Of a stretch of 64,000 nucleotides of DNA, positions 1,007-63,886 are shown piece by piece (the stretch's first letter is position 1; each line of letters begins with the position of its first letter). The notes below the pieces were generated by a model. The model did not search any database, was not told the DNA's origin, and saw nothing but the letters and a program-made list of their open reading frames with translations. The stretch lies in the IMG/VR virus record IMGVR_UViG_3300047320_000285, positions 62,001 through 126,000 of that record; one strand, written 5' to 3'. Both the position numbers and the translations under genes were made by a program.

Positions 1007-1036
1007 TGTGCCCCGGCTTCGGCTGGGGCATATGCC
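1007..1036 (+). terminator. hairpin + TATGCC terminator-like element
   Basis: TGTGCCCCGGC-TTCG-GCTGGGGCATA stem overlapping TATGCC. Confidence 0.75.
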
Positions 1037-1053
1037 CTAAACGATTTCAGCAA

Positions 1054-1061
1054 TATATTAC
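1054..1061 (+). promoter_or_regulatory. phiKZ-type early promoter motif TATATTAC
   Basis: Exact TATATTAC in an intergenic gap after a terminator; the motif recurs at 47959 and 54739. Confidence 0.7.
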
Positions 1062-1168
1062 CGAAAAGAGCCTGTTAGAATTAATGAAACAGGTAGATGC
1101 TTTGAGGGGTGATGCCCAGTCATCTCTCACTTACACTAATCAACACTAAGATACAAGGAGTATGTGTC

Positions 1169-2032
1169 ATGACGACGATTGCATGGGACGGTAAGGTACT
1201 GGCAGTAGACAGCCGTAGTTCTTCCCCAGAGACTCGGCAAGAAGCTACCAGTGATCCCAAACGCACTCGCATCTGCTTTCATTGCGAACGTCCAGCATGG
1301 ACGGGTAGTGATGATTCGCAGAAGCTCGTGATTCTGCCTAAGGTCACATGGCGTGGTGAACGGATTCTCGCGGCAGCGGGCACCGGTATGGCACGCGACT
1401 GTGATCGGATCCGGCACGTAATGCAACGCCCGCCCGAAGGCCAGACGGAGTTCGAAAAGATCTGGGAAAGCTACAGTTCGTTGGCACCGCGTAAAATTGC
1501 TGGGATGCAACCATTTGGTGCCATCTCTGCACACTTCGTGGTGGTGACGGAAACACGTCTATGGGTGCTAGAGTTTGAAGGCAACTCGCTCAGTAGTTAT
1601 CTGGAACCGCGCGATGTCATGTTTGCCAAAGGCTCGGGTCGGGATGCTGCGATGTTGGCAATGACGATCATGGGGGCAACTGCCGCCAATGCGGTATGGG
1701 CAGCTCGGGCGATCGACCCGGCGACTGGGGGTCCAGTCAAGTGGGTCGATACCACCGAACAATTGGTGGAGGGCAAAATGACTCGGTCGCTGGAGCATGA
1801 AGAAGCACCGCTGAGTCGCGAAGAAGCGGCGGCGTATGTGCGCAGTGGTTTTACCGTTCGTCCGGAGAAACCTGAGCTGGTCGGCATCCACGAATCGGCG
1901 CCTTCGAAAGAAGAACCGCTGACCGCAGAGGTTGCGAGTCAGATTGCCGAACAGGCACGTAGTAATGGCAAACCGGCTGTCAAGAAAGTTGCCGTCAAGA
2001 AAACCCCTAGCAGGACTACAACCAAGAAATAA
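1169..2032 (+). CDS. Ntn-hydrolase (proteasome beta/HslV-like) protein
   Basis: RBS AAGGAG, then MTTIAWDGKVLAVDSR (N-terminal Thr nucleophile) and GSG...A..IDPATGG motifs. Confidence 0.7.
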   Translation: MTTIAWDGKVLAVDSRSSSPETRQEATSDPKRTRICFHCERPAWTGSDDSQKLVILPKVTWRGERILAAAGTGMARDCDRIRHVMQRPPEGQTEFEKIWESYSSLAPRKIAGMQPFGAISAHFVVVTETRLWVLEFEGNSLSSYLEPRDVMFAKGSGRDAAMLAMTIMGATAANAVWAARAIDPATGGPVKWVDTTEQLVEGKMTRSLEHEEAPLSREEAAAYVRSGFTVRPEKPELVGIHESAPSKEEPLTAEVASQIAEQARSNGKPAVKKVAVKKTPSRTTTKK

Positions 2033-2042
2033 GGAGTAGGTC

Positions 2043-2687
2043 GTGAGCGAGTTCATGTATTGTCGTGAGTGTAACACCGAGCGTACCGGTCCGGAGATCT
2101 GCTGGAAGTGCAATTCGGCGCTGGAGGAAGTCAAGCACGATCACTGGCATCCGCTGAATATGCCACCGCTTGAGAGAGTACGTGAACTCGCCAAGGAATG
2201 CGGCTATGCATGTGCAATGCATGGTTCGCAGGAACGCGATCTGGATGTGGTGTTGGTGGCGTGGACCGACGAGGCACTGACCCGTACCTATGCCGAAGTC
2301 ATGCACTACATCGCCGCCGGATTGATCGCAGAGAACGGTCTGCCTGCTAGGGTGGTGGAGATTGAAGCCAAGCCACTCGGTCGACATGCCTGTACCATTC
2401 AGATGAACGGCTGGTACAAAGCCATCGATCTGTCGATGGCGGCGTTTATCGCACCCAAGCTGACCAATGAGCAGGCACTGGATGTGCTCGAAGGTGCCGA
2501 CTACATCGATGGCAAGCCGAACTCCCGTGAACCTGACTGGCACACGTTTGGTAGCGATACGGTAGCGATCAGTCTGGATGGTCGCTTTACCCGCGAAGAG
2601 TTGTTGGCCGTCCTGCATTTCCATCCCGACAACCTCCCGGTCGGAACCACCATCGGCTGGCCTGAACCGAAGGAAAAGACAGCATGA
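2043..2687 (+). CDS. hypothetical protein with Zn-ribbon and nucleotidyltransferase-like motif
   Basis: CxxC...CxxC N-terminus and HGSQERDLDVV motif; RBS AAGGAG. Confidence 0.6.
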   Translation: MSEFMYCRECNTERTGPEICWKCNSALEEVKHDHWHPLNMPPLERVRELAKECGYACAMHGSQERDLDVVLVAWTDEALTRTYAEVMHYIAAGLIAENGLPARVVEIEAKPLGRHACTIQMNGWYKAIDLSMAAFIAPKLTNEQALDVLEGADYIDGKPNSREPDWHTFGSDTVAISLDGRFTREELLAVLHFHPDNLPVGTTIGWPEPKEKTA

Positions 2688-3372: not shown

Positions 3373-3392
3373 TACAAATAAGGAGAACAAAG

Positions 3393-3707: not shown

Positions 3708-3790
3708 CTCTGCAAGGAAGCATCATGAGACTGAAGGCCCTGAGACAGCCCCGGTGGATGACGTGGTTTAACAAGAAGGAGGAAAGTGCG

Positions 3791-4114: not shown

Positions 4115-4120
4115 AGCGTA

Positions 4121-4156
4121 TCCCCTAGGGCATAAAACGCCCTAGGGGGTTATGCC
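4121..4156 (+). terminator. hairpin + TATGCC terminator-like element
   Basis: CCCCTAGGGC-ATAAAAC-GCCCTAGGGG stem followed by TTATGCC. Confidence 0.75.
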
Positions 4157-4215
4157 GTAAAAAGTCCATCGCCTGCAATCATGCTGTGGACCTCTTCCCT
4201 TATTATCAATAACAA

Positions 4216-6941: not shown

Positions 6942-7052
6942 AATCGTGAGCTGCAACCTAAACAGCTCCTTTCTTTCGTGGGATTGACAGGATTACGGGG
7001 GTTCTGTCTCTTACTGACCATCCCCGATTATACTAGGAATAAGAATACAATC

Positions 7053-8930
7053 ATGAAGAAGAATATCATCGCAGTGGCAATTTTGGCTTCACTTGCTGTA
7101 TCGTCGGCATACGCAAATTGCGGTAATGGTGGTAGCAACGGGAATGGTTGCGGGGGCGAACAAGGACCGGCAGGCCCGCAAGGTCCCGCCGGTCCTCAGG
7201 GTCCGCAAGGTGTTGCGGGTCAGAACGGCAAGGACGGCGCGTCGGTTACTGGTGTCAGCATCAATGGCACTTCAGTCACGACAACGCTCTCCAATGGTTC
7301 GTCGGTGCAAGGTACGGTCACGGGGGTGGCTACGACTGCACAGCTGAACAGCACGAATAGCAACGTCGCGACGAACACGTCGAACATCACGACGCTGCAA
7401 GGTCAGGTTAGCCAGCAAGGCGGTGCAATCGCCGGTCTGCAGGTTAGTAGCGCCACGCACCAAGAAGTCGCTGACACGGCAGCCGGCACGCTGGCTGCCG
7501 CCAACGCCCACACGGATGCATCAGTGGGTGCAGAAGCGGCGCGCGCGAAGGGCGCCGAAGCAGGTCTGCAGTCGCAGATCAACGGCGTGAGCGGTACCGC
7601 CAACCAAGCGCTGGCGAATTCGAAGGACGCGCAGGCAACTGCGGGTCAAGCGAAGTCGATCGCGCAAGGCGCCGCGGCCACGGCTAACCAAGCCGAAGGC
7701 ATTGCAGTCGGTGCTGCTATCACAGCGACGGGTGCAGCGATCGTTGCCGGTCATGCAGAAGGCGTTGCTGAAAGTGCGGCCGCACAAGCCAAGTCGGCTA
7801 CGGCTACGGCGAACCATGCTGACTCAGTCGCCGGTCAAGCACTCGCAGCGGCGAAGGATGCCGACACGGATGCCGATGCGGCAGGCAAGGCAGCCGCACA
7901 CGCCCAAGGCACGGCAGACACAGCGCTGGCTTCGTCGGCACAAAACGCCAAGGACATCAAGTCCGAAGCGCAAGCCCGTGCAGCAGGCGATGCCGCCACG
8001 CTGAAGTCGGCCAATAGCTACACGGATTCGGCCGTGGCGAACGGGGTGTCGCAAGCAGAATCATACGCTGATGCTGGCGATGCCAAGACGCTGAATTCTG
8101 CGAACAAGCATGCGGACCAAGCCGCTGCGGCGGCCTACGTCGGTGCAGTCGCGACCTCGGCAGCTTACACGGATGCGACGGCGTCGAAGACGTTGAAGTC
8201 GGCGAATTCGTACACCGACAAAGCAGTTGGTGCCGAGTCTAGCCGCGCCCAATCGGCCGAAGGTCAACTGCAGTCCAACATCAATTCGGAATCGACTCGC
8301 GCGCAGACGGCTGAAGCTGGTCTGAACACGAAGATCGACAACGAAACGACGCGGGCGACGACAGCCGAAGCCGGGCTGCAAACCCAGATCAACGGGAACA
8401 GCCAGTCGATCACGCAAATCCAGTCGAACATGAACAAGGGCCAGATGGGTTCGGGCGCGCAAGTGCAATCGAACAACTCGGTGGCACTCGGTGCAGGTTC
8501 GGTGGCTGATCGTGACAACACGGTGTCGGTGGGTGCAGCAGGTGCCGAGCGTCAAGTGACGAACGTGGCAGCAGGTACGGCCGACACCGATGCGGTGAAC
8601 GTCGCGCAAGCTCGCTCGTACGCCCAGACGTCGTACCAGCAATCGACTGCTTACACGGATCAACGTGTGAACGCGCTGCAGAACTCGTTCGACAGCTTCA
8701 AGAAGGACACCTACGGTGGTCTGGCTTCGGTGCTGGCAATCGCGGGTCTGCCGCAACCGATCCAGAACGGCAAGTCGATGATCTCGGCGGCTGTCTCGAA
8801 CTACCACGGCGAGCAAGGTATTGCTGTCGGTATCTCAACCGTCCAAGGCAACTTCGTGATCAAGGCCGGTGTCTCCACGTCCACGCGCGGTGATGTCGGC
8901 GCAGTCGCTTCGGCAGGCTACCAGTTCTAA
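7053..8930 (+). CDS. YadA-family trimeric autotransporter adhesin with collagen-like segment
   Basis: Signal peptide [21 protein letters not shown]; (GXY)n; ANSYTD stalk repeats; [24 protein letters not shown] head-neck; beta-anchor ending GYQF. Confidence 0.9.
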
Positions 8931-8943: not shown

Positions 8944-8977
8944 GGGAAAGGGGCCTTCGGGTCCCTTTTCTTTTTTT
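8944..8977 (+). terminator. canonical intrinsic terminator
   Basis: AAAGGGGCC-TTCG-GGTCCCTTT stem followed by a long T tract. Confidence 0.85.
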
Positions 8978-10719: not shown

Positions 10720-10721
10720 GA

Positions 10722-10752
10722 TAGTGCCGGCCTTCGGGTCGGCTGCTATGCC
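10722..10752 (+). terminator. hairpin + TATGCC terminator-like element
   Basis: GCCGGCC-TTCG-GGTCGGC followed by TGCTATGCC. Confidence 0.75.
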
Positions 10753-11161: not shown

Positions 11162-11235
11162 CTCCTGACCCTTCCCGGTATTGGGAGGGGTCTTATGTTG
11201 TACGCTGTACTTAAGATAACCAAGAAGGAAAGACC

Positions 11236-12966: not shown

Positions 12967-12967
12967 A

Positions 12968-13003
12968 GCATAGCCCTGCCCAGAAGGGCAGGGCAAATAT
13001 GCC
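12968..13003. terminator. GCATA-hairpin-TATGCC element (bidirectional form)
   Basis: GCATA GCCCTGCCC-AGAA-GGGCAGGGC AAATATGCC. Confidence 0.75.
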
Positions 13004-13053
13004 GCTTCTTTTTTTGGTGATCTTATGACAATTCTCTTACCAACGGGGTACCT

Positions 13054-13980: not shown

Positions 13981-14016
13981 GGCATAGGACCCGGCCAGCA
14001 GGCCGGGCTTTATGCC
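13981..14016. terminator. GGCATA-hairpin-TATGCC element
   Basis: GGCATA..CCCGGCC-AGCA-GGCCGGG..TTTATGCC. Confidence 0.8.
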
Positions 14017-23083: not shown

Positions 23084-23112
23084 TGCCCGCTCTTCGGAGT
23101 GGGCTGTATGCC
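23084..23112 (+). terminator. hairpin + TATGCC terminator-like element
   Basis: GCCCGCTC-TTCG-GAGTGGGC followed by TGTATGCC. Confidence 0.75.
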
Positions 23113-24353: not shown

Positions 24354-24390
24354 GTCATAAGCCCCCGCCCGAAGGCGGGGGCGTTTATGC
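24354..24390. terminator. bidirectional terminator between convergent genes
   Basis: GTCATAA GCCCCCGCC-CGAA-GGCGGGGGC GTTTATGC. Confidence 0.8.
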
Positions 24391-24405
24391 TGGTTCTTTT
24401 TTCGA

Positions 24406-27289: not shown

Positions 27290-27389
27290 GGATAACTCCA
27301 ACAAGCAAAACAAAAAGCCTGTGTGGCCGCCTCAGGGTTTTTTCCTGGGGTTGCCACCTTTTATGCCCTACGGAAACTAAGGAGATCTG

Positions 27390-27644
27390 ATGTTTGCTTG
27401 GCTTAAGAAAAACCTACTGCGCCGCAAGAATCGCGCACCCAAGTACGCGTCACCAGAATACTGGCGTGAGCGTTACGGGATTGAAGTACCGCCGTATCCG
27501 GATTGTCCGAGCTGCGACAAGAACAGTAACATCATCAGTGCGGGTGACAGTGGCTCGACGGGTGAAGCACGCTACTACTGTTGTAGCTGTCACGAGCATT
27601 TCTTCTCAGGCGGTTGGGGCAGCGGCATAGGGGCCCGACCGTAG
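27390..27644 (+). CDS. small Zn-ribbon protein
   Basis: RBS AAGGAG; CPSC...CCSC. Confidence 0.7.
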   Translation: MFAWLKKNLLRRKNRAPKYASPEYWRERYGIEVPPYPDCPSCDKNSNIISAGDSGSTGEARYYCCSCHEHFFSGGWGSGIGARP

Positions 27645-27658
27645 CCGGGCCGAGAGGC

Positions 27659-28015: not shown

Positions 28016-28057
28016 TATAAGACTCCAGTAAGTAGTTGGGGTTACCGCATAGCATTT

Positions 28058-33784: not shown

Positions 33785-34636
33785 ATGCCAACCAAAGCAG
33801 GCCGTCTTCGCATTGAAGACATTCGGGTCGGCCGAGTGATCTACGACGTCGGCATTGACTGGTCGACCTTCTCGGCGTTTGCTCGTCCGCTGAAGATCGT
33901 CGCATGGGCCCCGCACAGCTACAACGCGGGTCGGGACATCATGTTCACCACGCTCGAACCGGAAGGTAACTACCACGGTTTCCATTCGCGTCGCAACATT
34001 ACGCAGTGTGGATTCTACGGTACGTTCGATCAGGGTCGACCCGATTCGGAAATCATCGAACGCGAATCCACACCGATCAACTTCTTCGTCAACAAGCGGG
34101 CCGCAGAACGCTATATGGACCGTATGCTGGCTGACGGGACGTGGCCGTGGGAAAGACCTGCCGCGTTCGAAGCGTACGGTTACAAGCCCGTTAAACCGCG
34201 CCCGACGCCGGAGAATATCGGACCGGCCGCGCAGCGGGAAGTCGAAGCGATCTGGGGTCGGATCAATACCGAGCTGGCTGGCTCGCCGCTGACCGGGTTT
34301 TCGAATAAGGAACTCGTCTCGGTGATCGATCGCTACATCACCAAGCTGCTCAAGACCGATGCCAAGGGTCCGGTGATCACCATCGAGAGCTGGAAGCAGG
34401 AACCGGATGGTTCAGTCTCGTTCACGGTGACAGGTCCGCCTGAAGTGGTCGCAAGTATGCGAGCAGCTCAGCAACAGGCGGCCAGCATTGGCGTGGCCAA
34501 GGACCTCGAAGGTGACACGATACGTGAATCGTTCTCGGCACTCGACTCGCTCAGACGCCAGTTAATCGGCACACGTCACGAGTACGGCATAGAGCCCTCG
34601 CCCGAAGGCGAGGGCTCGGTCAAAGCTGGCGAGTAA
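33785..34636 (+). CDS. hypothetical protein (paralog pair member 2)
   Basis: AAGGAG RBS; MPTKAGRLRIEDIRVGR. Confidence 0.75.
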   Translation: MPTKAGRLRIEDIRVGRVIYDVGIDWSTFSAFARPLKIVAWAPHSYNAGRDIMFTTLEPEGNYHGFHSRRNITQCGFYGTFDQGRPDSEIIERESTPINFFVNKRAAERYMDRMLADGTWPWERPAAFEAYGYKPVKPRPTPENIGPAAQREVEAIWGRINTELAGSPLTGFSNKELVSVIDRYITKLLKTDAKGPVITIESWKQEPDGSVSFTVTGPPEVVASMRAAQQQAASIGVAKDLEGDTIRESFSALDSLRRQLIGTRHEYGIEPSPEGEGSVKAGE

Positions 34637-37582: not shown

Positions 37583-37614
37583 GTACGCCCCACCTTCGGG
37601 TGGGGTCGTATGCC
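37583..37614 (+). terminator. hairpin + TATGCC terminator-like element
   Basis: CCCCACC-TTCG-GGTGGGG followed by TCGTATGCC. Confidence 0.75.
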
Positions 37615-39410: not shown

Positions 39411-39436
39411 GCCACCCTCAGGGGTGGCTTTATGCC
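39411..39436 (+). terminator. hairpin + TATGCC terminator-like element
   Basis: GCCACCC-TCAG-GGGTGGC TTTATGCC. Confidence 0.75.
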
Positions 39437-39807: not shown

Positions 39808-39940
39808 CCATGTATCTGTGCCTTCCGTTTAACTTTTTGTCGATGTTCTGGTGCGGTATTATGATGGCCGGCATGCGTCAGACGTTCTCGACCGAGCCAC
39901 CCAAGACCAAAAAGAAACAAGCCGACTAACCGGCTACGGG

Positions 39941-39969
39941 GCCTCGTCTGCGGACGGGGCTACTATGCC
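39941..39969 (+). terminator. hairpin + TATGCC terminator-like element
   Basis: GCCTCGTC-TGCG-GACGGGGC TACTATGCC. Confidence 0.7.
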
Positions 39970-41333: not shown

Positions 41334-42464
41334 ATGAGCGACGCAATTATCAAATACGAACGCACCGAGCAAGGTGTGCGCATTGTTCCCGTGTATCGGG
41401 AAGAAACGAAGGACTACTTCGTCGATCTGTCGAAGATCGCGCCATGGCTCGTTGAAGTCGATGGCGTCGAAGTACAGACCGCAGCCCTGAAGATCGGCAC
41501 GCTTTTCGATCTGCTTGGCATCAGCCAGACGCAGTCGTTGCTCGACACCGGCGTGCTCGACATGACCGATTCGCTCGACCCGAACATCGCGCTCGAATCG
41601 ATCTTCGTCGAAGCGAAGTATCCGGACGGCACGTCGAAAGTCCAGCGCTACGAACTCGTGCACGATACGGGTGATCAGCAGGTCGGCACGCAGTTCACGT
41701 TCTTGGCACAGAACCATCGCCAGCTGGAAGTGAGCTACCACACCAACACGCTGCTCTCGCCGTCGGCTAACTCAGCGATGGATCTGCATGTCGCCGGTAT
41801 CATCAACCTCCAGCTGGGTCACTGCGAACTGGTGGCCTCGGGCGTGCAAGCGGGTACGGAACCCGACGTCGAACACGAAGTGATCGGCTATACGCTCAAA
41901 GCTTTCCGCACGAACTACAACCGTCGGCCGGTTGAGATTCCGGCAGTCTGGCCGGAAGGCGAAGCAGTGTTGAAGCAGCCGGAAGCCGAGCAGGAAGCAG
42001 CACCGGAAACACCGGAAGTGATCAGCGCGTTCTCGGGTAAGGAATACATGCCGGGTTACTTCAACCAAGGCAAGCACATCACGTCCCACGAAGTCGAAGG
42101 TGCGGCCAGCAACCTGACGATCACGGTCGGCGATGAACCGGCCGTTCCCGGCAACGCCAACCACCGCTACGACATCACGGGTTTCGATACCGACTCGAAC
42201 GCATCGGAATACGAAGGTTCGTTTGCGCGTGCGTTGTCGATTCTGTTCCAGAACGGTCCGATCCCGTCGCATGGCAATAACGGTGTGACGCTCGAAGCGT
42301 TGCTCGCCGTGGCAGCACATCGTCTGGAAGGTTTCCAAGCGGGTCCGTTCGCTTCGCAGGACAACGAAGACGCCCTCAGTCACATCAAGATGGCGCTCGA
42401 AGCTTTGCAGCGCCGGACTCGCAATCGCATCGCCCGTGAGGTCGAGGGCACCTATCAAGCCTAA
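41334..42464 (+). CDS. fusion of phiKZ-type major-capsid-like domain and Tad1-like anti-defence sponge
   Basis: C-terminus GNANHRY..I.FQNGP....NGVT.E.LL.V..HRL..FQAGPFAS.DN..AL.HI..AL.....RT.NRI.R.VEGT matches the Tad1 pattern; N-terminus RIVPVYR..., DLLGISQT..LL..GV.D.TD.LDP.I.L, IGY.L.A.RTN.NRR recalls phiKZ gp120-family capsid. Confidence 0.75.
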   Translation: MSDAIIKYERTEQGVRIVPVYREETKDYFVDLSKIAPWLVEVDGVEVQTAALKIGTLFDLLGISQTQSLLDTGVLDMTDSLDPNIALESIFVEAKYPDGTSKVQRYELVHDTGDQQVGTQFTFLAQNHRQLEVSYHTNTLLSPSANSAMDLHVAGIINLQLGHCELVASGVQAGTEPDVEHEVIGYTLKAFRTNYNRRPVEIPAVWPEGEAVLKQPEAEQEAAPETPEVISAFSGKEYMPGYFNQGKHITSHEVEGAASNLTITVGDEPAVPGNANHRYDITGFDTDSNASEYEGSFARALSILFQNGPIPSHGNNGVTLEALLAVAAHRLEGFQAGPFASQDNEDALSHIKMALEALQRRTRNRIAREVEGTYQA

Positions 42465-44003: not shown

Positions 44004-44040
44004 GTCATACGGGCCGAGCCTTCGGGCTCGGCTTTATGAT
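44004..44040. terminator. TCATA-hairpin-TATGA element
   Basis: GTCATAC GGGCCGAGCC-TTCG-GGCTCGGC TTTATGA. Confidence 0.8.
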
Positions 44041-47903: not shown

Positions 47904-47906
47904 TTC

Positions 47907-47936
47907 GACCCGGCCCCCAAGGCTGGGTCTTATGCC
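47907..47936 (+). terminator. hairpin + TATGCC terminator-like element
   Basis: GACCCGGCC-CCCAA-GGCTGGGTC TTATGCC. Confidence 0.8.
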
Positions 47937-47958
47937 GTGTTCCAAAAGTTTTGAACAA

Positions 47959-47966
47959 TATATTAC
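47959..47966 (+). promoter_or_regulatory. early promoter motif TATATTAC
   Basis: Exact motif directly after a terminator. Confidence 0.7.
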
Positions 47967-50301: not shown

Positions 50302-50365
50302 AGTAACACCCCTGCCCGAGGCGCCCAGCCTCGGGTTTTATACCGTGTACAACTGGAGAGAATAA

Positions 50366-52590: not shown

Positions 52591-52620
52591 GGCCAGCCTC
52601 ACGGGGCTGGCCTTTATGCC
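52591..52620 (+). terminator. hairpin + TATGCC terminator-like element
   Basis: GGCCAGCCTC-ACG-GGGCTGGCC TTTATGCC. Confidence 0.8.
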
Positions 52621-54673: not shown

Positions 54674-54716
54674 AAGCTTGAGTACGGGGACGCCTTCGGG
54701 TGTCCCCGTCTATGCC
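54667..54716. terminator. GGCATA-hairpin-TATGCC element
   Basis: ACGGGGACGCC-TTCG-GGTGTCCCCGT CTATGCC. Confidence 0.8.
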
Positions 54717-54738
54717 GTGTTCTAAAGAATCTCAGTCC

Positions 54739-54746
54739 TATATTAC
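54739..54746 (+). promoter_or_regulatory. early promoter motif TATATTAC
   Basis: Exact motif directly after a terminator. Confidence 0.7.
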
Positions 54747-56997: not shown

Positions 56998-57050
56998 GGC
57001 ATAAGCCCCCAGCCTTCGGGCTGGGGGACCTATGACCTCTCTTTTTTTTT
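56998..57050. terminator. bidirectional terminator between convergent blocks
   Basis: GGCATAA GCCCCCAGCC-TTCG-GGCTGGGGG ACCTATGAC...T tract. Confidence 0.85.
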
Positions 57051-57051: not shown

Positions 57052-58311
57052 TTACGAATGACGCTTGGCGAGGATGTCCTTGGTCATCTGGAAGAGCTTG
57101 TACGTCTCTTCCGACGGCTCTTCGTGCTGGTAAGCCGCCGCAGCCTTGTTCAGGAAGCTCAGGATCTTGTAGTACAGATTGAACGAGTCTGTGAACATAT
57201 ACGACTGGATCATCATCACCGCACTTTGCATCTGCGTGATGCGGCTACCGAACGTGCCCAGCGCATTCAGGTACTGCGACGAAAGCGTCTGACGATGTTT
57301 GCTGTTGATACCTTCAGCTTCCATCTTGTCGCCTTCAGTCGCCAGATCCGTGGCGTCCTTGATGCCCGCATCCAGCTGCGCTTGCACCGAGGTCAGTACG
57401 CCACTCCAACGATCGAGCAACGGACCGGTGTCGTTCATCGAAATGCGCGTGATGACCCGCTCCAGCTCATCAGACATGCGCACCAGATCGTAGATCTTCT
57501 CGCTCGAGTTGGTGGCATCCGGCAAGCTTTCCTTGGCGTCGCGTGCGGCCCACAACGCCTTGAGCATCACGTCGGTGCTGTCGCGATTGCTGTCGACCAA
57601 CGACTTGGACTTCTCGTCGTAGAACATACCGGTGTGCTGCTCGGTGAAAGGCTCACCGTTCACGTCCTTCAGCTTGACCTCGGTGATCACCTTCTTGAAC
57701 CACTCGTCCAGCGCGCTCAGTTGGGTGCTGATCTCGGTCAGGGCATTGCCATGCTCGAGTTCTTTCACCAGCTCCAGCAAGCTCTTCATGTACGGGCCAT
57801 CGACGAAAATGTCATTCTCGGTCGGGGTCAGGCCATGGAAGAACTCGGTGTCAAGCTTGTGGGAGGTGACGACCTCCTTGAAGGTCTTGGCTTCCCGCAA
57901 GTCCTTGGCGTCCTGCGCAGCAGAGACCACCAAGCGCGCACTGCCTTCTGCCGCGTGGATCTGCTCCTTGGTTTCTTTGGCGTTCTTCTTGCCGCCGAAC
58001 AAGGACTTCACCCAATCCACGCACTTGCGGATGATCCGCTTGAGCAGCTCGTACGCCTGACGATACAGCTCATTCAGACGCTTGGCGAACGACTCGGTGG
58101 CGATGGTGTAGCGTTTCTGCTTGCTACCCACGCTGTAGTAGGTGTCGAGCAGGCCGTTGTGACCCAGTACCGGAATCGACTCGAGTGCCAGTTCCGGGGT
58201 GAGCGTTTTGTTCTCTGCCAGTTGCTCGGAGATCTGCACGAAGTCCTGCACGTTTTCGTGCAGGCTCTCGACTTCTCCTTGCTCGGCAGACGTGTCGAAC
58301 ACGTCGTCCAT
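57052..58311 (-). CDS. phiKZ-like internal head protein paralog
   Basis: Acidic propeptide with ALE and IATES sites, then a K...W.K..F amphipathic helix. Confidence 0.7.
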   Translation of the reverse strand: MDDVFDTSAEQGEVESLHENVQDFVQISEQLAENKTLTPELALESIPVLGHNGLLDTYYSVGSKQKRYTIATESFAKRLNELYRQAYELLKRIIRKCVDWVKSLFGGKKNAKETKEQIHAAEGSARLVVSAAQDAKDLREAKTFKEVVTSHKLDTEFFHGLTPTENDIFVDGPYMKSLLELVKELEHGNALTEISTQLSALDEWFKKVITEVKLKDVNGEPFTEQHTGMFYDEKSKSLVDSNRDSTDVMLKALWAARDAKESLPDATNSSEKIYDLVRMSDELERVITRISMNDTGPLLDRWSGVLTSVQAQLDAGIKDATDLATEGDKMEAEGINSKHRQTLSSQYLNALGTFGSRITQMQSAVMMIQSYMFTDSFNLYYKILSFLNKAAAAYQHEEPSEETYKLFQMTKDILAKRHS

Positions 58312-58320
58312 TACAGCTCC

Positions 58321-59706
58321 TTATTTCTTGGCGTTCTTGGCGCGCGTTTTGACGTCGTTCATACGCTTGAGCAGGTCTTCCTTGCGCCGTCGGATCCGCT
58401 CCACTTCGTCTTGGAACTTCGGATCGATGTCGGCCATCGTGTCAGCGCCGAACGTCTCGAAGATCTCAAGGACGTAGTCCATCACGATTTCCACCAACGT
58501 CACCGCGGCGTCGAAGTGATCCTCGATCATCGCGTAGCCGGCAGCCACGTCCTGAATCGACTTACCGAAAGCCCGCACCGCTTCGAGGGTCGCGCGATCC
58601 AGATACGTCTGCGCGGGCAGGTTACCGTTCTCGACGGTCTTCTCGTCGATCAGGGCACCCGGGTTGGTGAAGCGCTTCTCGGCTTCACCGAGCGACTTCT
58701 GCACGTCCTCGAACATCTTCAGGTATTCGTCACGATAGCGCAGTGCGAGTTCATACGGCATCGAATGACCGAGGTTGCTGGCGATCTGAATCGCCTTGTC
58801 GACGTCGTCCGGCAGCTTGGCGCTTGCGGAGGCATCCTTGGCTTCGATCGCTTTCTGACGCGCATGCGTCAAGTCACCCAACACTTTCTCCACCCGCGCG
58901 TTGGTCAAACCCATGGCTGAGTCGACCTGCTGGCTGAACTTCTCCAGCGACTCCCGGGTGTACGGGACAATCTGGTCGTGCGTACCCGGACCGGCCGGTG
59001 CCTCGGCGTGACTGGCGTCGACCTTGTGGGCTTCTTGTTGCAGCTCGCGGTATTCTTGGCCGACGCCTTCAGCGATTTGACGCAGGTAGTTGCTGGTGTC
59101 TTTCTCGCATACCACGCCGATCAGGGTCTTGATGGCTTCCATGTAGGGGCCATCGACCAGCATGTCACGCTGCGCGTTATTCAGCTTGGCACCGAACTTC
59201 TCATCGAGTTTGTCGACATCGATGATGTTCTTCATCATCTTCTTGCCAGCGCGCTCCATCGCGACTTTGTCGCGCTTGAGGATGCCGAAGATTTCTTCCA
59301 GCAGCGTCGACATGTCGAGGTAAGCCTTGTAGACTTCCTTGTGCAATGGCCGACGCCGCTTGGTGCCACCCTTGCGCAGCCAGACGATGAAACCCTGCAT
59401 CAGCGCTTGGGAAGCGGCGATGACTCTGGCAATCAGGGCCCAGATCTTCTTGAGCACCGTTTTGACCGTGTCCTTCACCGACTCGGTGGCGACTGCGTCT
59501 TCCGTCGGAGTTTGACCCGTCAGGAACAGTTGCACGTCACCCGCTCGGCAGGCTTCGTCGATCCCACCCAGCGCCTCGTCCAGTTCTTCGAGGGCGGCCA
59601 GCGTTTCCTGCTGCTCAGCGGCCGCGCCCAACGGGACAGCCACAAACATGCCGTCCACTACTTGGACGGTTTCGCCTTCGAGGGCGAGCTTTAACAGACG
59701 ACCCAT
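58321..59706 (-). CDS. phiKZ-like internal head protein paralog
   Basis: AAGGAGG RBS; MGRLLKLALEGE.V.VV.GMF.AVP...VATES. Confidence 0.75.
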   Translation of the reverse strand: MGRLLKLALEGETVQVVDGMFVAVPLGAAAEQQETLAALEELDEALGGIDEACRAGDVQLFLTGQTPTEDAVATESVKDTVKTVLKKIWALIARVIAASQALMQGFIVWLRKGGTKRRRPLHKEVYKAYLDMSTLLEEIFGILKRDKVAMERAGKKMMKNIIDVDKLDEKFGAKLNNAQRDMLVDGPYMEAIKTLIGVVCEKDTSNYLRQIAEGVGQEYRELQQEAHKVDASHAEAPAGPGTHDQIVPYTRESLEKFSQQVDSAMGLTNARVEKVLGDLTHARQKAIEAKDASASAKLPDDVDKAIQIASNLGHSMPYELALRYRDEYLKMFEDVQKSLGEAEKRFTNPGALIDEKTVENGNLPAQTYLDRATLEAVRAFGKSIQDVAAGYAMIEDHFDAAVTLVEIVMDYVLEIFETFGADTMADIDPKFQDEVERIRRRKEDLLKRMNDVKTRAKNAKK

Positions 59707-59716
59707 CTCGCCCTCC

Positions 59717-60844
59717 TTAAGCGGTTTCGAAATCGAACTTGAAGTCGAAATCCTTGAACCTGAATTCCTTGAACAAGTTCTGCATGTCGTGATCAAAGAA
59801 GCCGTCGAGTTCGGCGTTGATCTCTTCCACCACGTCTTTCTCGCCCTTGTGGGCGGACTTGGTGCGACTGAGCGCTTCCTTGCGGAACGCGATGATCTCG
59901 CCCACCAGCCCCCATGTATCGGCTTCGAAGCGGGTCATGTAATTCACCGCCGACATGTAGAGCTTGATCATTTCCCAGTAACGGCGCAGCACTTCAGTCA
60001 ACTGCCCATCAGCACCTTCCACGCCCTTATTCGCCAGCGCACTGGCTCGCTTGGAAATCTCGCCGACGATATGATCACACTTCTCGAGCGTGAGCTTCCA
60101 GTTGCCGGAGATCGTGAAGATGTTCAGCGTTTTGAGCCAGCCGGTCACGCCGTTGATGGTACCGATTTGCTCATGGATGTTCTCCGGGAAGGACGGCTTG
60201 TCGCTGTCGACCTTATCCATCGCCTCTTTGGCCACGCTCATGGCCGCATTCATCGGCTCGACGCACTCGGCGAAGACCTTACGCATCTTCTCGGCTTCGG
60301 CCAGTTGAGCCTCTTGGTTGCCCGGGGTGTTGATCACGTTGACAAACGAGTTGACCACATCGACAATCGCTTGTCGGTGGCCGTTATTCGACAACAGCGC
60401 TGTGATCTTGACGATGGCATCCTTGTAGCCGGGATTGGTCAAGACGGTCTTTTTCTCCACCGAGAGCTTGTCCCAGAACTTCTCACCCAGTCCGTCAGCC
60501 TTGATCACCGAGTTGACCTTGTCTTCCACCGTCAGCGGCCGGCGCTCGGTGAACTTCTTGGCGAGCAGCTCATACTGGCGCCGCACCTCCTCGGTCATGG
60601 TGCGGTCTTTGCTGGTGCGACCGGTGATATGGTTGATAAAGCCTTTGATAGCCGCCGCAATCGCAGCCGCAATCTTGGCAATCACTTCCCAGACTTTCTG
60701 ACCGGCTTTCTTGAGGGTCTCGCCAAACGCTTCGGTCGAGATCGCTTGGACGTCTTCGCCCATACCGATCGGCACGCCAATGAACATACCCTCGACGATC
60801 TCGACCTGTTCGCCTTCTAGAGCGACTTTCAACATACGGTTCAT
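59717..60844 (-). CDS. phiKZ-like internal head protein paralog
   Basis: MNRMLKVALEGEQVEIVEGMFIGVP...ISTEAFGE. Confidence 0.75.
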   Translation of the reverse strand: MNRMLKVALEGEQVEIVEGMFIGVPIGMGEDVQAISTEAFGETLKKAGQKVWEVIAKIAAAIAAAIKGFINHITGRTSKDRTMTEEVRRQYELLAKKFTERRPLTVEDKVNSVIKADGLGEKFWDKLSVEKKTVLTNPGYKDAIVKITALLSNNGHRQAIVDVVNSFVNVINTPGNQEAQLAEAEKMRKVFAECVEPMNAAMSVAKEAMDKVDSDKPSFPENIHEQIGTINGVTGWLKTLNIFTISGNWKLTLEKCDHIVGEISKRASALANKGVEGADGQLTEVLRRYWEMIKLYMSAVNYMTRFEADTWGLVGEIIAFRKEALSRTKSAHKGEKDVVEEINAELDGFFDHDMQNLFKEFRFKDFDFKFDFETA

Positions 60845-60847
60845 GGC

Positions 60848-61906
60848 TTAGCCTTTCAGTTTGATTTTCTTCAGTTCCTCGAGCTGAGCGCCCAGCTCGT
60901 CCTTCAGACCGGGGTACGTTTGGACCGTCATCTCGAGTGCGCGAATCCGTGTGCTGATAATCTTGTTCAGCGCGTTGATCGCCGTCCATTCGAGATCGAA
61001 CAGCTTGTTCAGCCCACTGATAATCTGTTTGACTGCGCGCCAATAAACGTTAAACGCCTGCGCCGACTGCTTCGCGGCTTCCGTGGCCGCCTCGGTGCGC
61101 TGACCAAAAAGTTCAGTCTGGAACTGCTCGAGACTCTTTTCCAGCTCGGGCAAGATGTCGTCTTCGTACTTGTTGAGTACGCCCGTGCGTAAGTTGCTAT
61201 GCAGCAGCTCATTCGAGGTCCGCAAGCTGGCGACGATCTCGTCGATCTTGATGGGGACTTCCAGTTCCTTCGCATCGATCTTCGCCGCGTGCTGCGTACC
61301 TGCGGTGCGAAGCGTCGCGATCTTGTCCAGCAGCTTTTGCACTTCACTATCGGGCTTGTGCGTAGGCTTCTGACCTTCGTTAAGCGCGTATTTGAAGTCG
61401 TCCTTCAACATACGCACCCCGTCGCGCAACAGCGTACGGGCGGTGGCGGACTCCGCGACCTTCTCGAGTTCCAGCAAGGCCTTGAAGTTATCCGAACCGC
61501 TCACCAGATCGTATTCGTCTTGATCGAACTGGGTACGGGTCGTGCCGTGGTTGTCGGCGTTCCAGACCGATTCGATCTTTTCTTCCGAGGTGGTGCGGCG
61601 CAGCTCGGTGACCGCTTTGAGCGCCAGGCCATACTCGCGTCGCACTTCATCGCTCAGCGTGCGGTTGCGACCGCCGCCGTGGCGGAACCACTTGATGAAG
61701 CCCTTGACCGCCGCGATGGCACCGGCAATCAGTTTCGCCAGCATCTCCCATGCTGCCTTACCGGCCGATTTGACGGCGTCACCGAATGATTCCGTCGACA
61801 GGGCCCGCACGTCCTCAGCTGCGCCAACCGGCACGGCCACAAACATACCCTCGATGACTTCAATGGTTTCGCCCTCGAGGGCGAGGCGCAGTGCGCGATT
61901 GTTCAT
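60848..61906 (-). CDS. phiKZ-like internal head protein paralog
   Basis: MNNRALRLALEGETIEVIEGMFVAVP...LSTESFGD. Confidence 0.75.
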   Translation of the reverse strand: MNNRALRLALEGETIEVIEGMFVAVPVGAAEDVRALSTESFGDAVKSAGKAAWEMLAKLIAGAIAAVKGFIKWFRHGGGRNRTLSDEVRREYGLALKAVTELRRTTSEEKIESVWNADNHGTTRTQFDQDEYDLVSGSDNFKALLELEKVAESATARTLLRDGVRMLKDDFKYALNEGQKPTHKPDSEVQKLLDKIATLRTAGTQHAAKIDAKELEVPIKIDEIVASLRTSNELLHSNLRTGVLNKYEDDILPELEKSLEQFQTELFGQRTEAATEAAKQSAQAFNVYWRAVKQIISGLNKLFDLEWTAINALNKIISTRIRALEMTVQTYPGLKDELGAQLEELKKIKLKG

Positions 61907-61920
61907 GATTGATCCTTGTA

Positions 61921-63057
61921 TCAGTCGCGCGGGCCACCGGCCCCACGCATGTGTTTCAGTTTTGCTGCATCCATTTTAAAGCGTCGATCGAGTTCGACGA
62001 TGCGATCCAGCACCGTTTCCCGATCCTTGTATTCGTCCATGGTGCGCTTGACCACCGCCTTCCAGAAGTCAATCACTGTGTCGGTCAGCTGGAAGACACC
62101 GCTGCGCAGCTGGTCAAGCATCGCCAAAGCCTTCAGGATAGGCTGCAATTCCTTCCAGAACGCCGCATAGCCGTCCAGCATGGTCTTGGCCTTAGTACGG
62201 AGTGCCTCATCGGTGCTCGCCCGTTCTGTAGCCTGTGTATGGCGCTGCGCCAGCTCCAGATCTTTCTCGATCAGTTCGATTTCTTTCTCCCACCGCATGA
62301 ATGTTTCCACGGTAGCCGAGCCGGAGAGCGTCTGAGCCATCGCCGCCAATACTGCGGCCAGCTTGTCTGGGTTCGCAGGCAGCCGATCAGTGCCTTTGTT
62401 CTTGTAGGCCACCGCAATCAGGTCGTGGATGGTCTGTAGTTTCTCAGGCAGACTTTCGAATTGAGCATGCACGGAGTCGATCTGCTTTTGCACGTTCTGG
62501 GTATCATCGTCTTGCAACGGGTGGCTGGGTCCGAGCTTGGCGAGTGCCACCAACATCGCACTGGCCTTGACCACTTCGCTCTGGTTGCCGGTGTCGAGCA
62601 TCTTCTCGACTGCTGCCACCGTCCCCAAGTAGGCCTTGGGGTCATCCAGCAAGGCGTGAGCGGTCGCAGACAGCTTGGCCGAATACTGCTTATCCAGACC
62701 ATCGGCTTTTGCCACTGACTCCATGCGCGAGTCCGGATCAGCATCTTTGAAGCCGCGGATGGTTTCTTCCATCACCTCGTACTGATGGACGATCTCTTTG
62801 TTGATCTTGCGACCCCGATCGCCCTTGACCTTGTTGAACAGCCACTTGGCGACACCTTTGATGGTAGCCAGCACCGCAGCGATCAGTTTAGCGATCTTGG
62901 CCCAGATGGCGCGAGCCACGCCTTCCACCTTCTCGCCCAACGATTCCGTTGACAGCGCGAGCATGTCTTCCTGCGCACTCAGTGGCACCGCAATAAACAT
63001 CCCTTCAACAATCTCGACCTGCTCGCCTTCCAACGCGAGCTTGAGCAAACGTCCCAT
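61921..63057 (-). CDS. phiKZ-like internal head protein paralog
   Basis: MGRLLKLALEGEQVEIVEGMFIAVP...LSTESLGE. Confidence 0.75.
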   Translation of the reverse strand: MGRLLKLALEGEQVEIVEGMFIAVPLSAQEDMLALSTESLGEKVEGVARAIWAKIAKLIAAVLATIKGVAKWLFNKVKGDRGRKINKEIVHQYEVMEETIRGFKDADPDSRMESVAKADGLDKQYSAKLSATAHALLDDPKAYLGTVAAVEKMLDTGNQSEVVKASAMLVALAKLGPSHPLQDDDTQNVQKQIDSVHAQFESLPEKLQTIHDLIAVAYKNKGTDRLPANPDKLAAVLAAMAQTLSGSATVETFMRWEKEIELIEKDLELAQRHTQATERASTDEALRTKAKTMLDGYAAFWKELQPILKALAMLDQLRSGVFQLTDTVIDFWKAVVKRTMDEYKDRETVLDRIVELDRRFKMDAAKLKHMRGAGGPRD

Positions 63058-63070
63058 TATGCGTTATCCT

Positions 63071-63802
63071 TTACCAACGTTGATGTGGGGGGAGCGAGAG
63101 CAGATCGGCGTGGGCCATCTTGGCACTCAGGTAATCTTCCCGGGTGATCGGTTTCACCGTGAATTCTTTGTCATCCTGCCACGAGGAGACGTGCTGCTGG
63201 TAGGGGCCTTCCACTTTCCAGAAGCCGCGGTCCAGATGGTGGTTCTTGCTGAACTTCACCCCGCCTTCTTTGGTGATCTCGGCAAAGAGTTCCACTTCGG
63301 TGTAAGGCTTACGACCCGAGCGGGCAATCATGCGAATCGAGCGAAAGAACATCTTACCCGCATTGATCGCGGCGTACTCGACGGTTTCCGGGCTGTAGGT
63401 GGTGAGCCACGTCTCGTCCGATTGCTTGGCGTCGTACACCAGCTTGTTATTGGGCTTAAGTGCCGCGTCGAACGGAAACGCGTAGAGTTTCCAGCCGCCC
63501 TTGTAGGCTTCTTCTTCCTTGGTGCCATCACTGGCCAGCACCCGGAAGTCACCATCGGCCTGAGCGTAACCAATAAAGCAGCCCAAAATCGTCGGGGCCA
63601 CGGTAATGCGCGGCACCGTACGGTCTTCACTCGGTGCCTGACGACGACCAATCAGCGGGATCCATTTACGGATCGACGTGTTGGTGGACATATGCAGCAG
63701 GAAATCTTGCTCCAGCTCAACCGGAGTAACGATCTCCACATTGCGCTGGACCTTCTCCGACGCATGTTCCAGCCATTTTTCCAGTTGATCAACGGAGTCC
63801 AT
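63071..63802 (-). CDS. conserved phiKZ-like phage protein (probable virion-associated)
   Basis: LLH.S......W.P.IG.RQ..SEDRTVPRI.VAPT.LGC..GY motif; AGGTG RBS; TATG 37 nt upstream. Confidence 0.7.
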   Translation of the reverse strand: MDSVDQLEKWLEHASEKVQRNVEIVTPVELEQDFLLHMSTNTSIRKWIPLIGRRQAPSEDRTVPRITVAPTILGCFIGYAQADGDFRVLASDGTKEEEAYKGGWKLYAFPFDAALKPNNKLVYDAKQSDETWLTTYSPETVEYAAINAGKMFFRSIRMIARSGRKPYTEVELFAEITKEGGVKFSKNHHLDRGFWKVEGPYQQHVSSWQDDKEFTVKPITREDYLSAKMAHADLLSLPPHQRW

Positions 63803-63855
63803 AATCACCTGCAAGTGAGGAAAATGTGAGAGGATTTACATAAAATCAGGCAACG

Positions 63856-63886
63856 GCATAAAGCCCGGGGATTTCGCCCCGAGCCT
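63856..63886 (-). terminator. hairpin + TATGCC element on the - strand
   Basis: GGCATAAAGC CCGGGG-ATTTCG-CCCCG on the + strand, downstream of a - strand gene. Confidence 0.6.

What the first reader, a model, noticed from the sequence alone, without database searches (positions are those of the whole stretch)
1007..63886. Window-wide non-canonical terminator grammar: GC hairpin followed by TATGCC instead of a U-tract
Seen: GC-rich stem-loops after stop codons are repeatedly followed within 0-5 nt by TATGCC (1031, 4151, 10747, 12998, 14011, 23107, 27362, 37609, 39431, 39964, 47931, 52615, 54711). Variants are TATGA/TATGC at about 24386, 44035 and 57031, and TATACC at about 50339. Where a - strand gene ends, the motif is mirrored as GGCATA before the stem (27624, 34586, 63856). 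Convergent junctions carry it on both sides (24354, 56998). Most of these stems have no poly-T. Inference: this is a termination or 3'-processing signal read by the phage's own multisubunit RNA polymerases (or a phage factor), not by host RNAP.
Basis: partly seen in the sequence, partly recalled or inferred. Interest (0 to 1): 0.68.

Follow-up and report, generated by a model that had tools for sequence, protein, structure and literature searches.

The report
PhiKZ-family hairpin-TATGCC transcription terminators
The GC hairpins followed by TATGCC are real and far beyond chance, but they are this uncultured jumbo phage's version of the conserved terminator motif already mapped by RNA 3'-end sequencing in its relatives phiKZ and 201phi2-1, so the finding is a solid new example of a known signal.

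Summary
Observation confirmed. All listed sites exist. Genome-wide (253.7-kb phiKZ-like rhizosphere phage contig, 57% GC), 51 of 104 TATGCC copies sit 0-4 nt after a strong GC hairpin, against 26 of 505 copies of the other TATGNN hexamers (TATGAC and TATGCT set aside; Fisher p=3e-26).

Consensus: stem-YTT-TATGCC-GT. The motif follows the hairpin in the direction of the gene that ends there. It is two-sided at about 13 of 16 convergent junctions, mostly one-sided at tandem junctions, and absent from 23 divergent junctions.

This matches the published phiKZ terminator motif (stem-loop + TTATKYYGT, 61 mapped terminators) and 201phi2-1 motif A. A covariance model trained only on window sites hits phiKZ (41), 201phi2-1 (63), Burkholderia phage FLC9 (48) and RP12 (21), but not AR9 or T4. 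The eight published 201phi2-1 termination coordinates fall on the fifth or sixth base of the hexamer.

The termination reading is therefore supported. "Not host RNAP" is not: those eight elements also terminate in uninfected Pseudomonas. The late-promoter reading (TATG, G=+1) fails as the main explanation, though a second role is not excluded. No RNA data exist for this phage. Verdict: new member of a known kind.

The parts
1009..1036 (+). Terminator: hairpin (UUCG loop) + TATGCC, after the gene ending at 1004. An early-promoter-like ATATTAC follows at 1055.
4120..4156 (+). Terminator: 10-bp stem, 7-nt loop, GT spacer, TATGCC, after the gene ending at 4114.
10721..10752 (+). Terminator: hairpin (UUCG loop) + TATGCC, after the gene ending at 10719.
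   Evidence: E 2.8e-5
11167..11199 (+). Variant terminator: hairpin + TATGTT.
12967..13003 (.). Two-sided element at a tandem junction: AGCATA-stem-TATGCC. It reads TATGCT on the - strand.
13981..14016 (.). Two-sided element: GGCATA-stem-TATGCC, after the gene ending at 13971.
23085..23112 (+). Terminator: hairpin (UUCG loop) + TATGCC, after the gene ending at 23075.
24354..24391 (.). Bidirectional terminator at the convergent junction between the + gene ending at 24344 and the - gene ending at 24406. Reads TATGCT on + and TATGAC on -.
   Evidence: best model score, 40.2 bits
25976..26007 (-). - strand terminator: hairpin + TATGAT, between the - genes 26019-26774 and 24406-25980.
27323..27367 (+). 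Atypical long, imperfect hairpin + TATGCC, after the gene ending at 27289.
27624..27655 (-). - strand terminator: hairpin + TATGCC (GGCATA on +), after the - gene 27659-28111.
34586..34617 (-). - strand terminator (UUCG loop) + TATGCC, after the - gene 34620-35321. It overlaps the end of the + ORF 33785-34636.
37587..37614 (+). Terminator: hairpin (UUCG loop) + TATGCC, after the gene ending at 37578.
39411..39436 (+). Terminator: hairpin + TATGCC, after the gene ending at 39406.
39938..39969 (+). Terminator: hairpin + TATGCC, 10 nt after a TAA stop at 39927-39929.
44004..44040 (.). Two-sided element: GTCATA-stem-TATGAT.
47905..47936 (+). Terminator: hairpin + TATGCC, directly followed by the early-promoter-like GTGTTC-N17-ATATTAC (47960).
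50314..50344 (+). Variant terminator: hairpin + TATACC. The same variant sits at the mapped 201phi2-1 termination site 230,027.
52591..52620 (+). Terminator: hairpin + TATGCC, upstream of the 661-aa gene.
54684..54716 (+). Terminator: hairpin (UUCG loop) + TATGCC after the gene ending at 54673, followed by GTGTTC-N17-ATATTAC (54740).
56998..57036 (.). Bidirectional terminator at the convergent junction between the + gene ending at 56994 and the - gene ending at 57052 (a phiKZ_IP-like internal head protein). Reads TATGAC on + and TATGCC on -.
63855..63886 (-). - strand terminator: hairpin + TATGCC, between the - genes 63902-65293 and 63071-63814.

Best explanation
These are the intrinsic-type transcription terminators of a phiKZ-like (chimallin-encoding, multisubunit-RNAP) jumbo phage. 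They are the same conserved element mapped in phiKZ and 201phi2-1 as stem-loop + TTATKYYGT.

Proposed working:
1. The transcript folds a GC-rich 7-10 bp hairpin, often closed by a C(UUCG)G tetraloop.
2. The next 8-9 nt, YUU-UAUGCC, form the last RNA:DNA hybrid.
3. The RNA is released at the final C of the hexamer.

The short U-rich half (UUUAU) next to the stem supplies the weak hybrid. The conserved Y|G step (CC followed by G) at the release point looks like the G-10/Y-1/G+1 elemental pause signature of multisubunit RNAPs. It probably replaces the pausing role of a long U-tract. This last point is inference.

Where genes converge, the element is built as a palindrome (GGCATA-stem-TATGCC) and stops transcription from both sides.

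Shown here: the sequence anatomy, the statistics, the orientation rule, model-level identity with the relatives' elements, and the coincidence with published 3' ends in 201phi2-1. Inferred: that 3' ends form here in this phage, and the pause mechanism.
For: 1. Coupling of TATGCC to hairpins: p=3e-26 and p=7e-39.
2. Position matrix from 80 sites: G-G-G-C/G-T-T | T-A-T-G-C-C-G-T-T. The stem-to-TATG gap is 0-4 nt in 78 of 80 sites.
3. Position: 59 of 80 sites lie within 90 nt after a co-oriented stop. About 13 of 16 convergent junctions are two-sided and 0 of 23 divergent junctions carry the element. The same rule holds with the depositors' own gene annotation in FLC9 and phiKZ.
4. RNA-level selection: at one-sided sites the loop is UUCG 7 times and its complement CGAA 0 times, always with a C..G closing pair.
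5. Published phiKZ consensus, stem-loop + TTATKYYGT, from 61 ONT-cappable-seq terminators. 201phi2-1 motif A resembles it.
6. Model R1, trained only on 22 window sites, finds 41 (phiKZ), 48 (FLC9), 63 (201phi2-1) and 21 (RP12) matches, and 0 in AR9 and T4.
7. All eight 201phi2-1 termination coordinates printed in the paper fall on base 5 or 6 of TATGNN, or of TATACC, right after a GC hairpin.
8. Lineage: beta-like RNAP subunit 51% identical to FLC9, a gp123 homologue at E 7e-76, and a chimallin homologue at E 9e-20.
Against: - No RNA data exist for this phage. Only one DNA metagenome run holds it, so 3' ends are inferred by homology.
- ONT-cappable-seq cannot tell termination from 3' processing and has roughly 2-nt resolution.
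- My gene calls are a crude codon-usage caller.
- The reason for conservation of A-U-G-C-C beyond U-richness is unproven.
- TATG is also the nvRNAP start motif in phiKZ, so a second role is not excluded.
- A few sites (for example G000 220024, 226298 and 51781) point against the local gene direction.
Confidence: 0.8

Rival explanations
1. TATGCC is simply the nvRNAP late or middle promoter (TATG with G=+1, as in phiKZ) of the downstream gene. It happens to sit behind the upstream gene's hairpin terminator.
For: - TATG is necessary for phiKZ nvRNAP initiation and is bound by a pocket in gp123.
- The gp123 homologue here keeps 8 of 14 pocket residues identical and 2 more conservatively changed.
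- At tandem junctions the next start codon is typically 24-107 nt downstream.
Against: - 32 of 59 sites face an opposing gene's 3' end.
- About 13 of 16 convergent junctions carry the motif on both sides, and 0 of 23 divergent junctions carry it.
- The tight 0-4 nt coupling to the stem, and the conserved CC-G-T after TATG, are absent from phiKZ late promoters. Yakunina et al. found no conservation downstream of TATG.
- The validated promoter P119L has an AT-rich upstream region with no hairpin, and TATG is followed by TAGA.
- Seven junctions have a separate GTGTTS-N17-ATATTAC promoter-like element just downstream.
- Mapped 3' ends, not 5' ends, coincide with the hexamer in 201phi2-1.
Confidence: 0.04
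2. Dual signal: the hexamer ends the upstream RNA and also lets nvRNAP restart at its G, either without leaving the DNA or by fresh binding. This would give stop-start transcription of gene arrays.
For: - The terminator core contains the exact nvRNAP start motif.
- Release at the CC leaves the bubble over TATG. The 2026 structure proposes that nvRNAP finds TATG by limited movement of an open bubble.
- The TATG pocket is largely conserved here.
- Many tandem sites have no other recognisable promoter before the next gene.
Against: - At convergent junctions a restart would only make antisense RNA.
- Early units, presumably read by the virion RNAP, end with the same motif.
- The elements work in uninfected host cells.
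- No start-site data bear on it here, because the supplementary tables are not held.
Confidence: 0.1
3. The hairpin + UAUGCC is an RNA processing or 3'-end stabilising site. It would be trimmed back to by exonucleases or cut by an endonuclease, and RNAP would not release there.
For: - ONT 3'-end mapping and terminator-trap fluorescence cannot separate termination from processing.
- UUCG-capped GC hairpins are classic barriers to 3' exonucleases.
Against: - A pure exonuclease barrier predicts 3' ends at the stem base, not 8-9 nt beyond it.
- It does not explain a conserved hexamer.
- Read-through drops of more than 99% were reported at these sites.
Confidence: 0.05
4. DNA-level palindrome bound by a dimeric phage protein (packaging, replication or nucleoid function), unrelated to transcription.
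For: Many copies are palindromic GGCATA...TATGCC.
Against: - The inner stems differ in sequence and keep only their pairing.
- 23 sites are one-sided and 20 of them follow the direction of transcription.
- UUCG over CGAA is 7:0 in the transcribed sense.
- The sites lie strictly at gene 3' ends.
Confidence: 0.01

Closest known systems
phiKZ conserved intrinsic terminator motif (Putzeys et al. 2024, PMC10914365): stem-loop followed by TTAT, consensus ...GGBYTTATKYYGT
   Same: GC-rich stem, short Y/T spacer, T-A-T-G/T-Y-Y-G-T tail, position after gene ends, and bidirectional copies between convergent genes. Model R1, built from the window, hits 41 phiKZ sites, including those after PHIKZ004, 030.1, 033.1 and 035 and at the convergent pairs 031.1/032, 041.3/042 and 051/052.
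   Different: Here the tail is sharpened to TATGCC (C,C instead of Y,Y; G instead of K) in a 57% GC genome. Flanking T-richness is largely gone. Elements at tandem junctions are mostly one-sided, whereas most phiKZ copies in the 50 kb examined are palindromic. No RNA mapping exists for this phage.
201phi2-1 terminator motif A (with motif B extending the stem) (PMC11512511)
   Same: Same hairpin + TATGYY grammar, with 63 model hits. The eight printed termination coordinates end on the hexamer, including a TATACC variant like window 50339.
   Different: The 201phi2-1 elements were tested in vivo and stop transcription in uninfected P. chlororaphis. Nothing has been tested for this phage.
Canonical bacterial Rho-independent terminator
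   Same: GC hairpin, release about 8-9 nt after the stem, and a U-rich segment next to the stem.
   Different: Only 3-4 U instead of a 7-9 nt U-tract, and the distal half is a conserved G-C-C. A hairpin + T-tract scan is not enriched over shuffles (20 against 19.4).
phiKZ nvRNAP late promoter (TATG, G=+1; P119L)
   Same: Shares the tetranucleotide TATG. The polymerase pocket that reads it is largely conserved in this phage.
   Different: No hairpin and no CCGT tail in P119L. The distribution in this genome is that of a terminator, not a promoter.

Membership tests
phiKZ-family conserved terminator motif (stem-loop + TTATKYYGT) | GC-rich stem-loop followed within a few nt by T-T-A-T-K-Y-Y-G-T | tested here: met
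   Position matrix of 80 sites..GGG(C/G)TT TATG C(60/80) C(62/80) G(47/80) T(38/80). A covariance model from window sites cross-hits phiKZ, 201phi2-1, FLC9 and RP12 and gives 0 hits in AR9 and T4.
phiKZ-family conserved terminator motif (stem-loop + TTATKYYGT) | Lies downstream of gene 3' ends, with bidirectional copies between convergent genes | tested here: met
   59 of 80 sites lie within 90 nt after a co-oriented stop. About 13 of 16 convergent junctions are two-sided and 0 of 23 divergent junctions carry the element.
phiKZ-family conserved terminator motif (stem-loop + TTATKYYGT) | RNA 3' ends map to the element | not testable with these tools
   No RNA run holds this genome. In 201phi2-1 the eight published termination coordinates fall on base 5 or 6 of the hexamer.
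phiKZ-family conserved terminator motif (stem-loop + TTATKYYGT) | Host genome is a phiKZ-like phage with its own multisubunit RNAP and a phage nucleus | tested here: met
   RNAP beta-like ORF (PF00562, 40.5 bits; 51% identity to FLC9). gp123 homologue at E 7e-76. Chimallin homologue at E 9e-20. phiKZ-type major capsid at E 5e-77.
Canonical Rho-independent terminator | U-tract of about 7-9 nt directly after the stem | tested here: not met
   Only YUUUAU precedes GCC. The T-tract terminator scan gives 20 against 19.4 in shuffles. TTTTTT follows 7 strong hairpins against 28 for TATGCC.
Canonical Rho-independent terminator | Stable GC-rich RNA hairpin at gene ends | tested here: met
   Stems of 7-12 bp at -14 to -28 kcal/mol. 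4-nt loops in 50 of 80 sites. UUCG favoured in the transcribed sense, 7:0.
phiKZ nvRNAP late promoter | TATG at the start site upstream of (late) genes, including at divergent junctions, with no conserved sequence downstream of TATG | tested here: not met
   Hairpin-linked TATGCC is absent from 23 divergent junctions. 32 sites face opposing gene ends. CC-G-T after TATG is conserved. P119L has no hairpin.
phiKZ nvRNAP late promoter | 5' ends of primary transcripts at the G | not testable with these tools
   No RNA data for this phage. The start-site tables of the relatives are not held.

The most novel reading that the evidence does not exclude
The terminator hexamer is not just a weak hybrid. 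It is read by the phage polymerase itself. The beta-lobe pocket that binds non-template TATG at late promoters would re-engage the same four bases during elongation. That would pause the enzyme 5-8 nt past the hairpin to trigger release, and at tandem junctions could let it restart at the G. One 6-nt word would then serve as both gene-end and gene-start signal in nucleus-forming jumbo phages.

This would explain why T-A-T-G-C/Y-C/Y has stayed constant from 37% to 57% GC genomes while the surrounding U-richness was lost.
Probability: 0.12. Interest if true: 0.72.

Novelty: new member of a known kind. Interest (0 to 1): 0.3.

Why it matters
- It gives a reliable annotation rule for transcription-unit ends in an uncultured, highly divergent jumbo phage and in the FLC9 and RP12 clade. 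About 75-80 such elements are predicted in this genome.
- Because the GC-rich genomes have lost general T-richness, they isolate the selected core of the family's terminator: YTT-TATGCC-G.
- The comparison shows that the core overlaps the nvRNAP start tetranucleotide, and that published 3' ends fall on the hexamer's last base. That makes the question of whether TATG is read during termination directly testable with existing purified phiKZ nvRNAP.
- The compact elements could also serve as terminator parts for GC-rich hosts.

Tried and rejected
- Megablast of 8 kb of the window against the phage records: no match.
- The search for related loci in viral contigs with the 661-aa protein: no relative. 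Orthologous-site covariation could therefore not be done. Paralogous sites were used instead.
- The look-up of sequencing runs: only one DNA rhizosphere metagenome, probably the source, and no RNA.
- Rfam at gathering thresholds: no family in the window. No tRNAs.
- Sliding 44-nt RNAfold windows at -13 kcal/mol: far too unspecific in a 57% GC genome (16,812 windows). Replaced by explicit hairpin finders.
- Supplementary start-site and termination-site tables of both ONT-cappable-seq papers are not held. Ceyssens 2014 was not found under the id I tried, which was recalled from memory. The overlap of starts with motif-bearing terminators in phiKZ and 201phi2-1 could therefore not be checked.
- PHROGs and Pfam left most large window proteins unnamed.
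- Considered and rejected: REP/MITE-like mobile repeat (stems differ in sequence), a start codon within TATG (no ORF follows), and a DNA-binding palindrome (one-sided, transcription-oriented copies).
- The big protein searches, structure prediction and complex prediction were not needed.

Full report
**Observation.** Each has a GC-rich stem-loop a few nucleotides after a stop codon, then 0-4 nt, then TATGCC. The variants are TATGCT 24386, TATGAT 44035, TATGAC 57031 and TATACC 50339. The mirror image GGCATA precedes the stem where a - strand gene ends (27624, 34586, 63855). Both convergent junctions (24354/24386 and 56998/57031) carry the motif on both sides. I found five more sites in the window: 11194, 12967(-), 13981(-), 25976(-) and 44004(-).

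**Statistics.** TATGCC by itself is only mildly over-represented in the window: 31 copies against 18.9 +/- 4.1 in shuffles. Its coupling to hairpins is what stands out. In the whole genome 51 of 104 TATGCC copies have a hairpin of -13 kcal/mol or stronger ending 0-6 nt upstream. The rate at random positions is 4.8% (p=7e-39). The rate for the TATGNN hexamers other than TATGCC, TATGAC and TATGCT is 26 of 505 (Fisher OR 17.7, p=3e-26). TATGCG has 77 copies and only one follows a hairpin of -14 kcal/mol or stronger. In an unbiased count of hexamers after strong hairpins, TATGCC ranks first with 28 and TTTTTT has 7.

**What the genome is.** The window is bases 62001-126000 of a 253,740-bp virus contig with short terminal repeats and 57% GC. 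Only one rhizosphere metagenome run holds it. It has no nucleotide-level relative among the phage records. It encodes the following:
- a beta-like RNAP subunit, 51% identical to that of Burkholderia phage FLC9 and 35-39% to Ralstonia RP12, PhiPA3 and other relatives;
- a homologue of phiKZ nvRNAP subunit gp123 (E 7e-76);
- a chimallin (phage-nucleus shell) homologue (E 9e-20);
- a phiKZ-type major capsid protein (E 5e-77);
- phiKZ_IP-like internal head proteins inside the window.

It is therefore a distant, GC-rich member of the phiKZ-like nucleus-forming jumbo phages.

**Anatomy.** I anchored 80 hairpin-linked sites on TATG (a few of these are chance hits inside genes). The consensus is G-G-G-(C/G)-T-T | T-A-T-G-C-C-G-T-T. 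After the invariant TATG come C (60/80), C (62/80), G (47/80) and T (38/80). The distance from the last paired base to TATG is 0-4 nt in 78 of 80 sites. Stems are 7-12 bp and loops are 4 nt in 50 of 80 sites. The spacer is usually YTT, so the RNA has a short U-rich stretch (UUUAU) and not a total absence of U. Thirteen sites also have a run of at least 5 T starting 1-12 nt after the hexamer. At one-sided sites the loop read in the sense of the motif is UUCG seven times, always closed C..G, and never its complement CGAA. This indicates that the hairpin is selected as RNA in that orientation. Paralogous sites differ in stem sequence but keep pairing.

**Orientation rule.** Using my own crude gene calls:
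- 59 of 80 sites lie within 90 nt downstream of a co-oriented stop codon.
- 27 of those are followed by a co-oriented gene and 32 face the 3' end of an opposing gene.
- About 13 of 16 real convergent junctions carry the motif on both sides as GGCATA-stem-TATGCC.
- Tandem junctions are mostly one-sided, with the motif downstream in the direction of transcription.
- None of the 23 divergent junctions has the element.

The depositors' annotations of FLC9 and phiKZ show the same rule independently. Examples are FLC9 gp13/gp14, gp25/gp26 and gp30/gp31, and phiKZ 031.1/032, 041.3/042 and 051/052. This is the distribution of a terminator, not of a promoter.

**It is a known family signal.** Putzeys et al. 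2024 (PMC10914365) mapped 133 phiKZ termination sites by ONT-cappable-seq. [quoted passage not shown] That is the motif found here, with K=G and YY=CC. The 201phi2-1 study (PMC11512511) found a resembling motif A in 59 terminators and a second motif that lengthens the stem.

I tested membership directly. A covariance model built only from 22 window sites (A2, R1) recovers held-out sites in the rest of this genome. At E<=0.1 per genome it finds:

| Genome | Matches |
|---|---|
| this genome | 46 |
| phiKZ | 41 |
| FLC9 | 48 |
| 201phi2-1 | 63 |
| RP12 | 21 |
| Bacillus phage AR9 (different promoter system) | 0 |
| T4 | 0 |

The 201phi2-1 paper prints eight termination coordinates: 183,876; 132,419; 84,756; 229,201; 179,552; 230,027; 189,851; 289,834. 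When I fetched those places, each coordinate was the sixth base (once the fifth) of TATGNN directly after a GC hairpin. So in a relative the RNA 3' ends lie 8-9 nt past the stem, on the last base of the hexamer, within the roughly 2-nt resolution of that method.

**Promoter rival.** In phiKZ, TATG with G=+1 is the nvRNAP late-promoter core (PMC4666361). It is bound as non-template single strand in a pocket of gp123 (PMC12809450). The gp123 homologue here keeps 8 of 14 named pocket residues and changes 2 conservatively, so TATG probably is this phage's late start signal too.

The hairpin-linked copies nevertheless do not behave as promoters:
- They face opposing genes or are two-sided at convergent junctions.
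- They are missing at divergent junctions.
- They have a conserved CC-G-T tail that phiKZ late promoters lack.
- The validated promoter P119L has an AT-rich, hairpin-free upstream region, with TATG followed by TAGA.

Hairpin-free TATG in AT-rich context does occur upstream of this phage's capsid gene and in divergent regions. Those copies are better late-promoter candidates. Seven junctions also carry a separate GTGTTS-N17-ATATTAC element, similar to what I recall of the phiKZ early-promoter consensus, just after the hexamer. A secondary start function of the terminator's TATG cannot be excluded without 5'-end data.

**Mechanism.** The hairpin, the U-rich proximal segment and release 8-9 nt after the stem fit intrinsic termination. 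The last C followed by G, with G about ten bases upstream at the stem's edge, matches the G-10/Y-1/G+1 elemental pause consensus of multisubunit RNAPs. That consensus is from my own knowledge of Larson et al. and Vvedenskaya et al. 2014 and was not tested here. I therefore think the conserved tail supplies the pause that a long U-tract normally gives.

Units that start at early-type promoters (for example 1055 to terminator 4120-4156) and units of structural genes (terminator 56998-57030, - strand) end with the same element. Both phage polymerases presumably stop there. This is inference.

**Host RNAP.** The eight 201phi2-1 elements terminate as well as or better than lambda T0 in uninfected P. 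chlororaphis. The element therefore needs no phage factor and is not blind to host RNAP. In the window's first 20 kb, neither sigma-70-like promoters (9 against 9.5) nor classical T-tract terminators (20 against 19.4) exceed shuffles. That is consistent with a host-independent programme.

**Verdict.** The termination reading is supported through relatives. The exclusivity to phage RNAP is not supported. The grammar is already published for phiKZ and 201phi2-1. This is a new, GC-rich member that sharpens the core to YTT-TATGCC-G and shows a clean orientation rule.

**Caveats.**
- No RNA data exist for this phage.
- My gene caller is crude.
- The 3'-end coincidence rests on eight coordinates quoted in a paper's text.
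No alternative genetic code, toxin repair or read laying was involved.

Noticed in passing
window 1032-1061, 47937-47966, 54717-54746; also G000 8208, 47956, 51779, 134432, 198016, 219135: Nine non-coding copies of ATATTAC, all on the + strand. Most have GTGTTC or GTGTTG exactly 17 nt upstream. Seven sit 24-35 nt after a hairpin-TATGCC. This resembles, from my memory, the AT-rich phiKZ early (virion RNAP) promoter consensus TATATTAC, so these are likely early promoters placed directly behind terminators.
   Followed up: partly
window 13003-13020, 24391-24405, 57036-57050; G000 8727-8745, 13989-14005, 179641-179655, 253236-253250: A run of 5-10 T starts 1-12 nt after the hexamer at 13 of 80 sites. 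In all examples I inspected it lies on the + strand side, often in the spacer before an opposing gene's stop. It may be a back-up U-tract or a signal for one of the two polymerases. Unexplained.
   Followed up: partly
window 6978-8930 (+): A 650-aa protein whose C-terminal 59 residues match the YadA-like membrane anchor of trimeric autotransporter adhesins (PF03895, E 1.6e-14, above cut-off). This is unusual for a phage protein. It could be a fibre or adhesin of host origin.
   Followed up: no
window 40504-41286 (+): A cyclophilin-type peptidyl-prolyl isomerase domain (PF00160, E 9e-50) is encoded in a frame that overlaps the ORF my caller preferred (40031-40786).
   Followed up: no
window 41334-42464 (+); G000 131737-134097: A 376-aa protein whose first 110 residues match part of the phiKZ major capsid protein (PF25620, E 4e-25). 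It is a capsid-related paralogue. The full-length capsid gene lies outside the window.
   Followed up: partly
window 57052-63057 (-): An array of large - strand genes with weak similarity to phiKZ internal head (inner body) proteins (PF12699, phrog_6807, phrog_5750), ending at the bidirectional terminator at 56998-57036.
   Followed up: no
G000 215074-215769 (outside the window): A 694-nt non-coding divergent region, the longest in the genome. It is AT-rich in parts and holds two hairpins that lack TATG (215400 and 215504). It could be a control or origin region.
   Followed up: no
window 8944-8977 (+): One of the few classical terminators: a 12-bp UUCG-looped hairpin followed directly by a T-run, with no TATG. 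Similar ones lie at G000 234894 and 245817.
   Followed up: no
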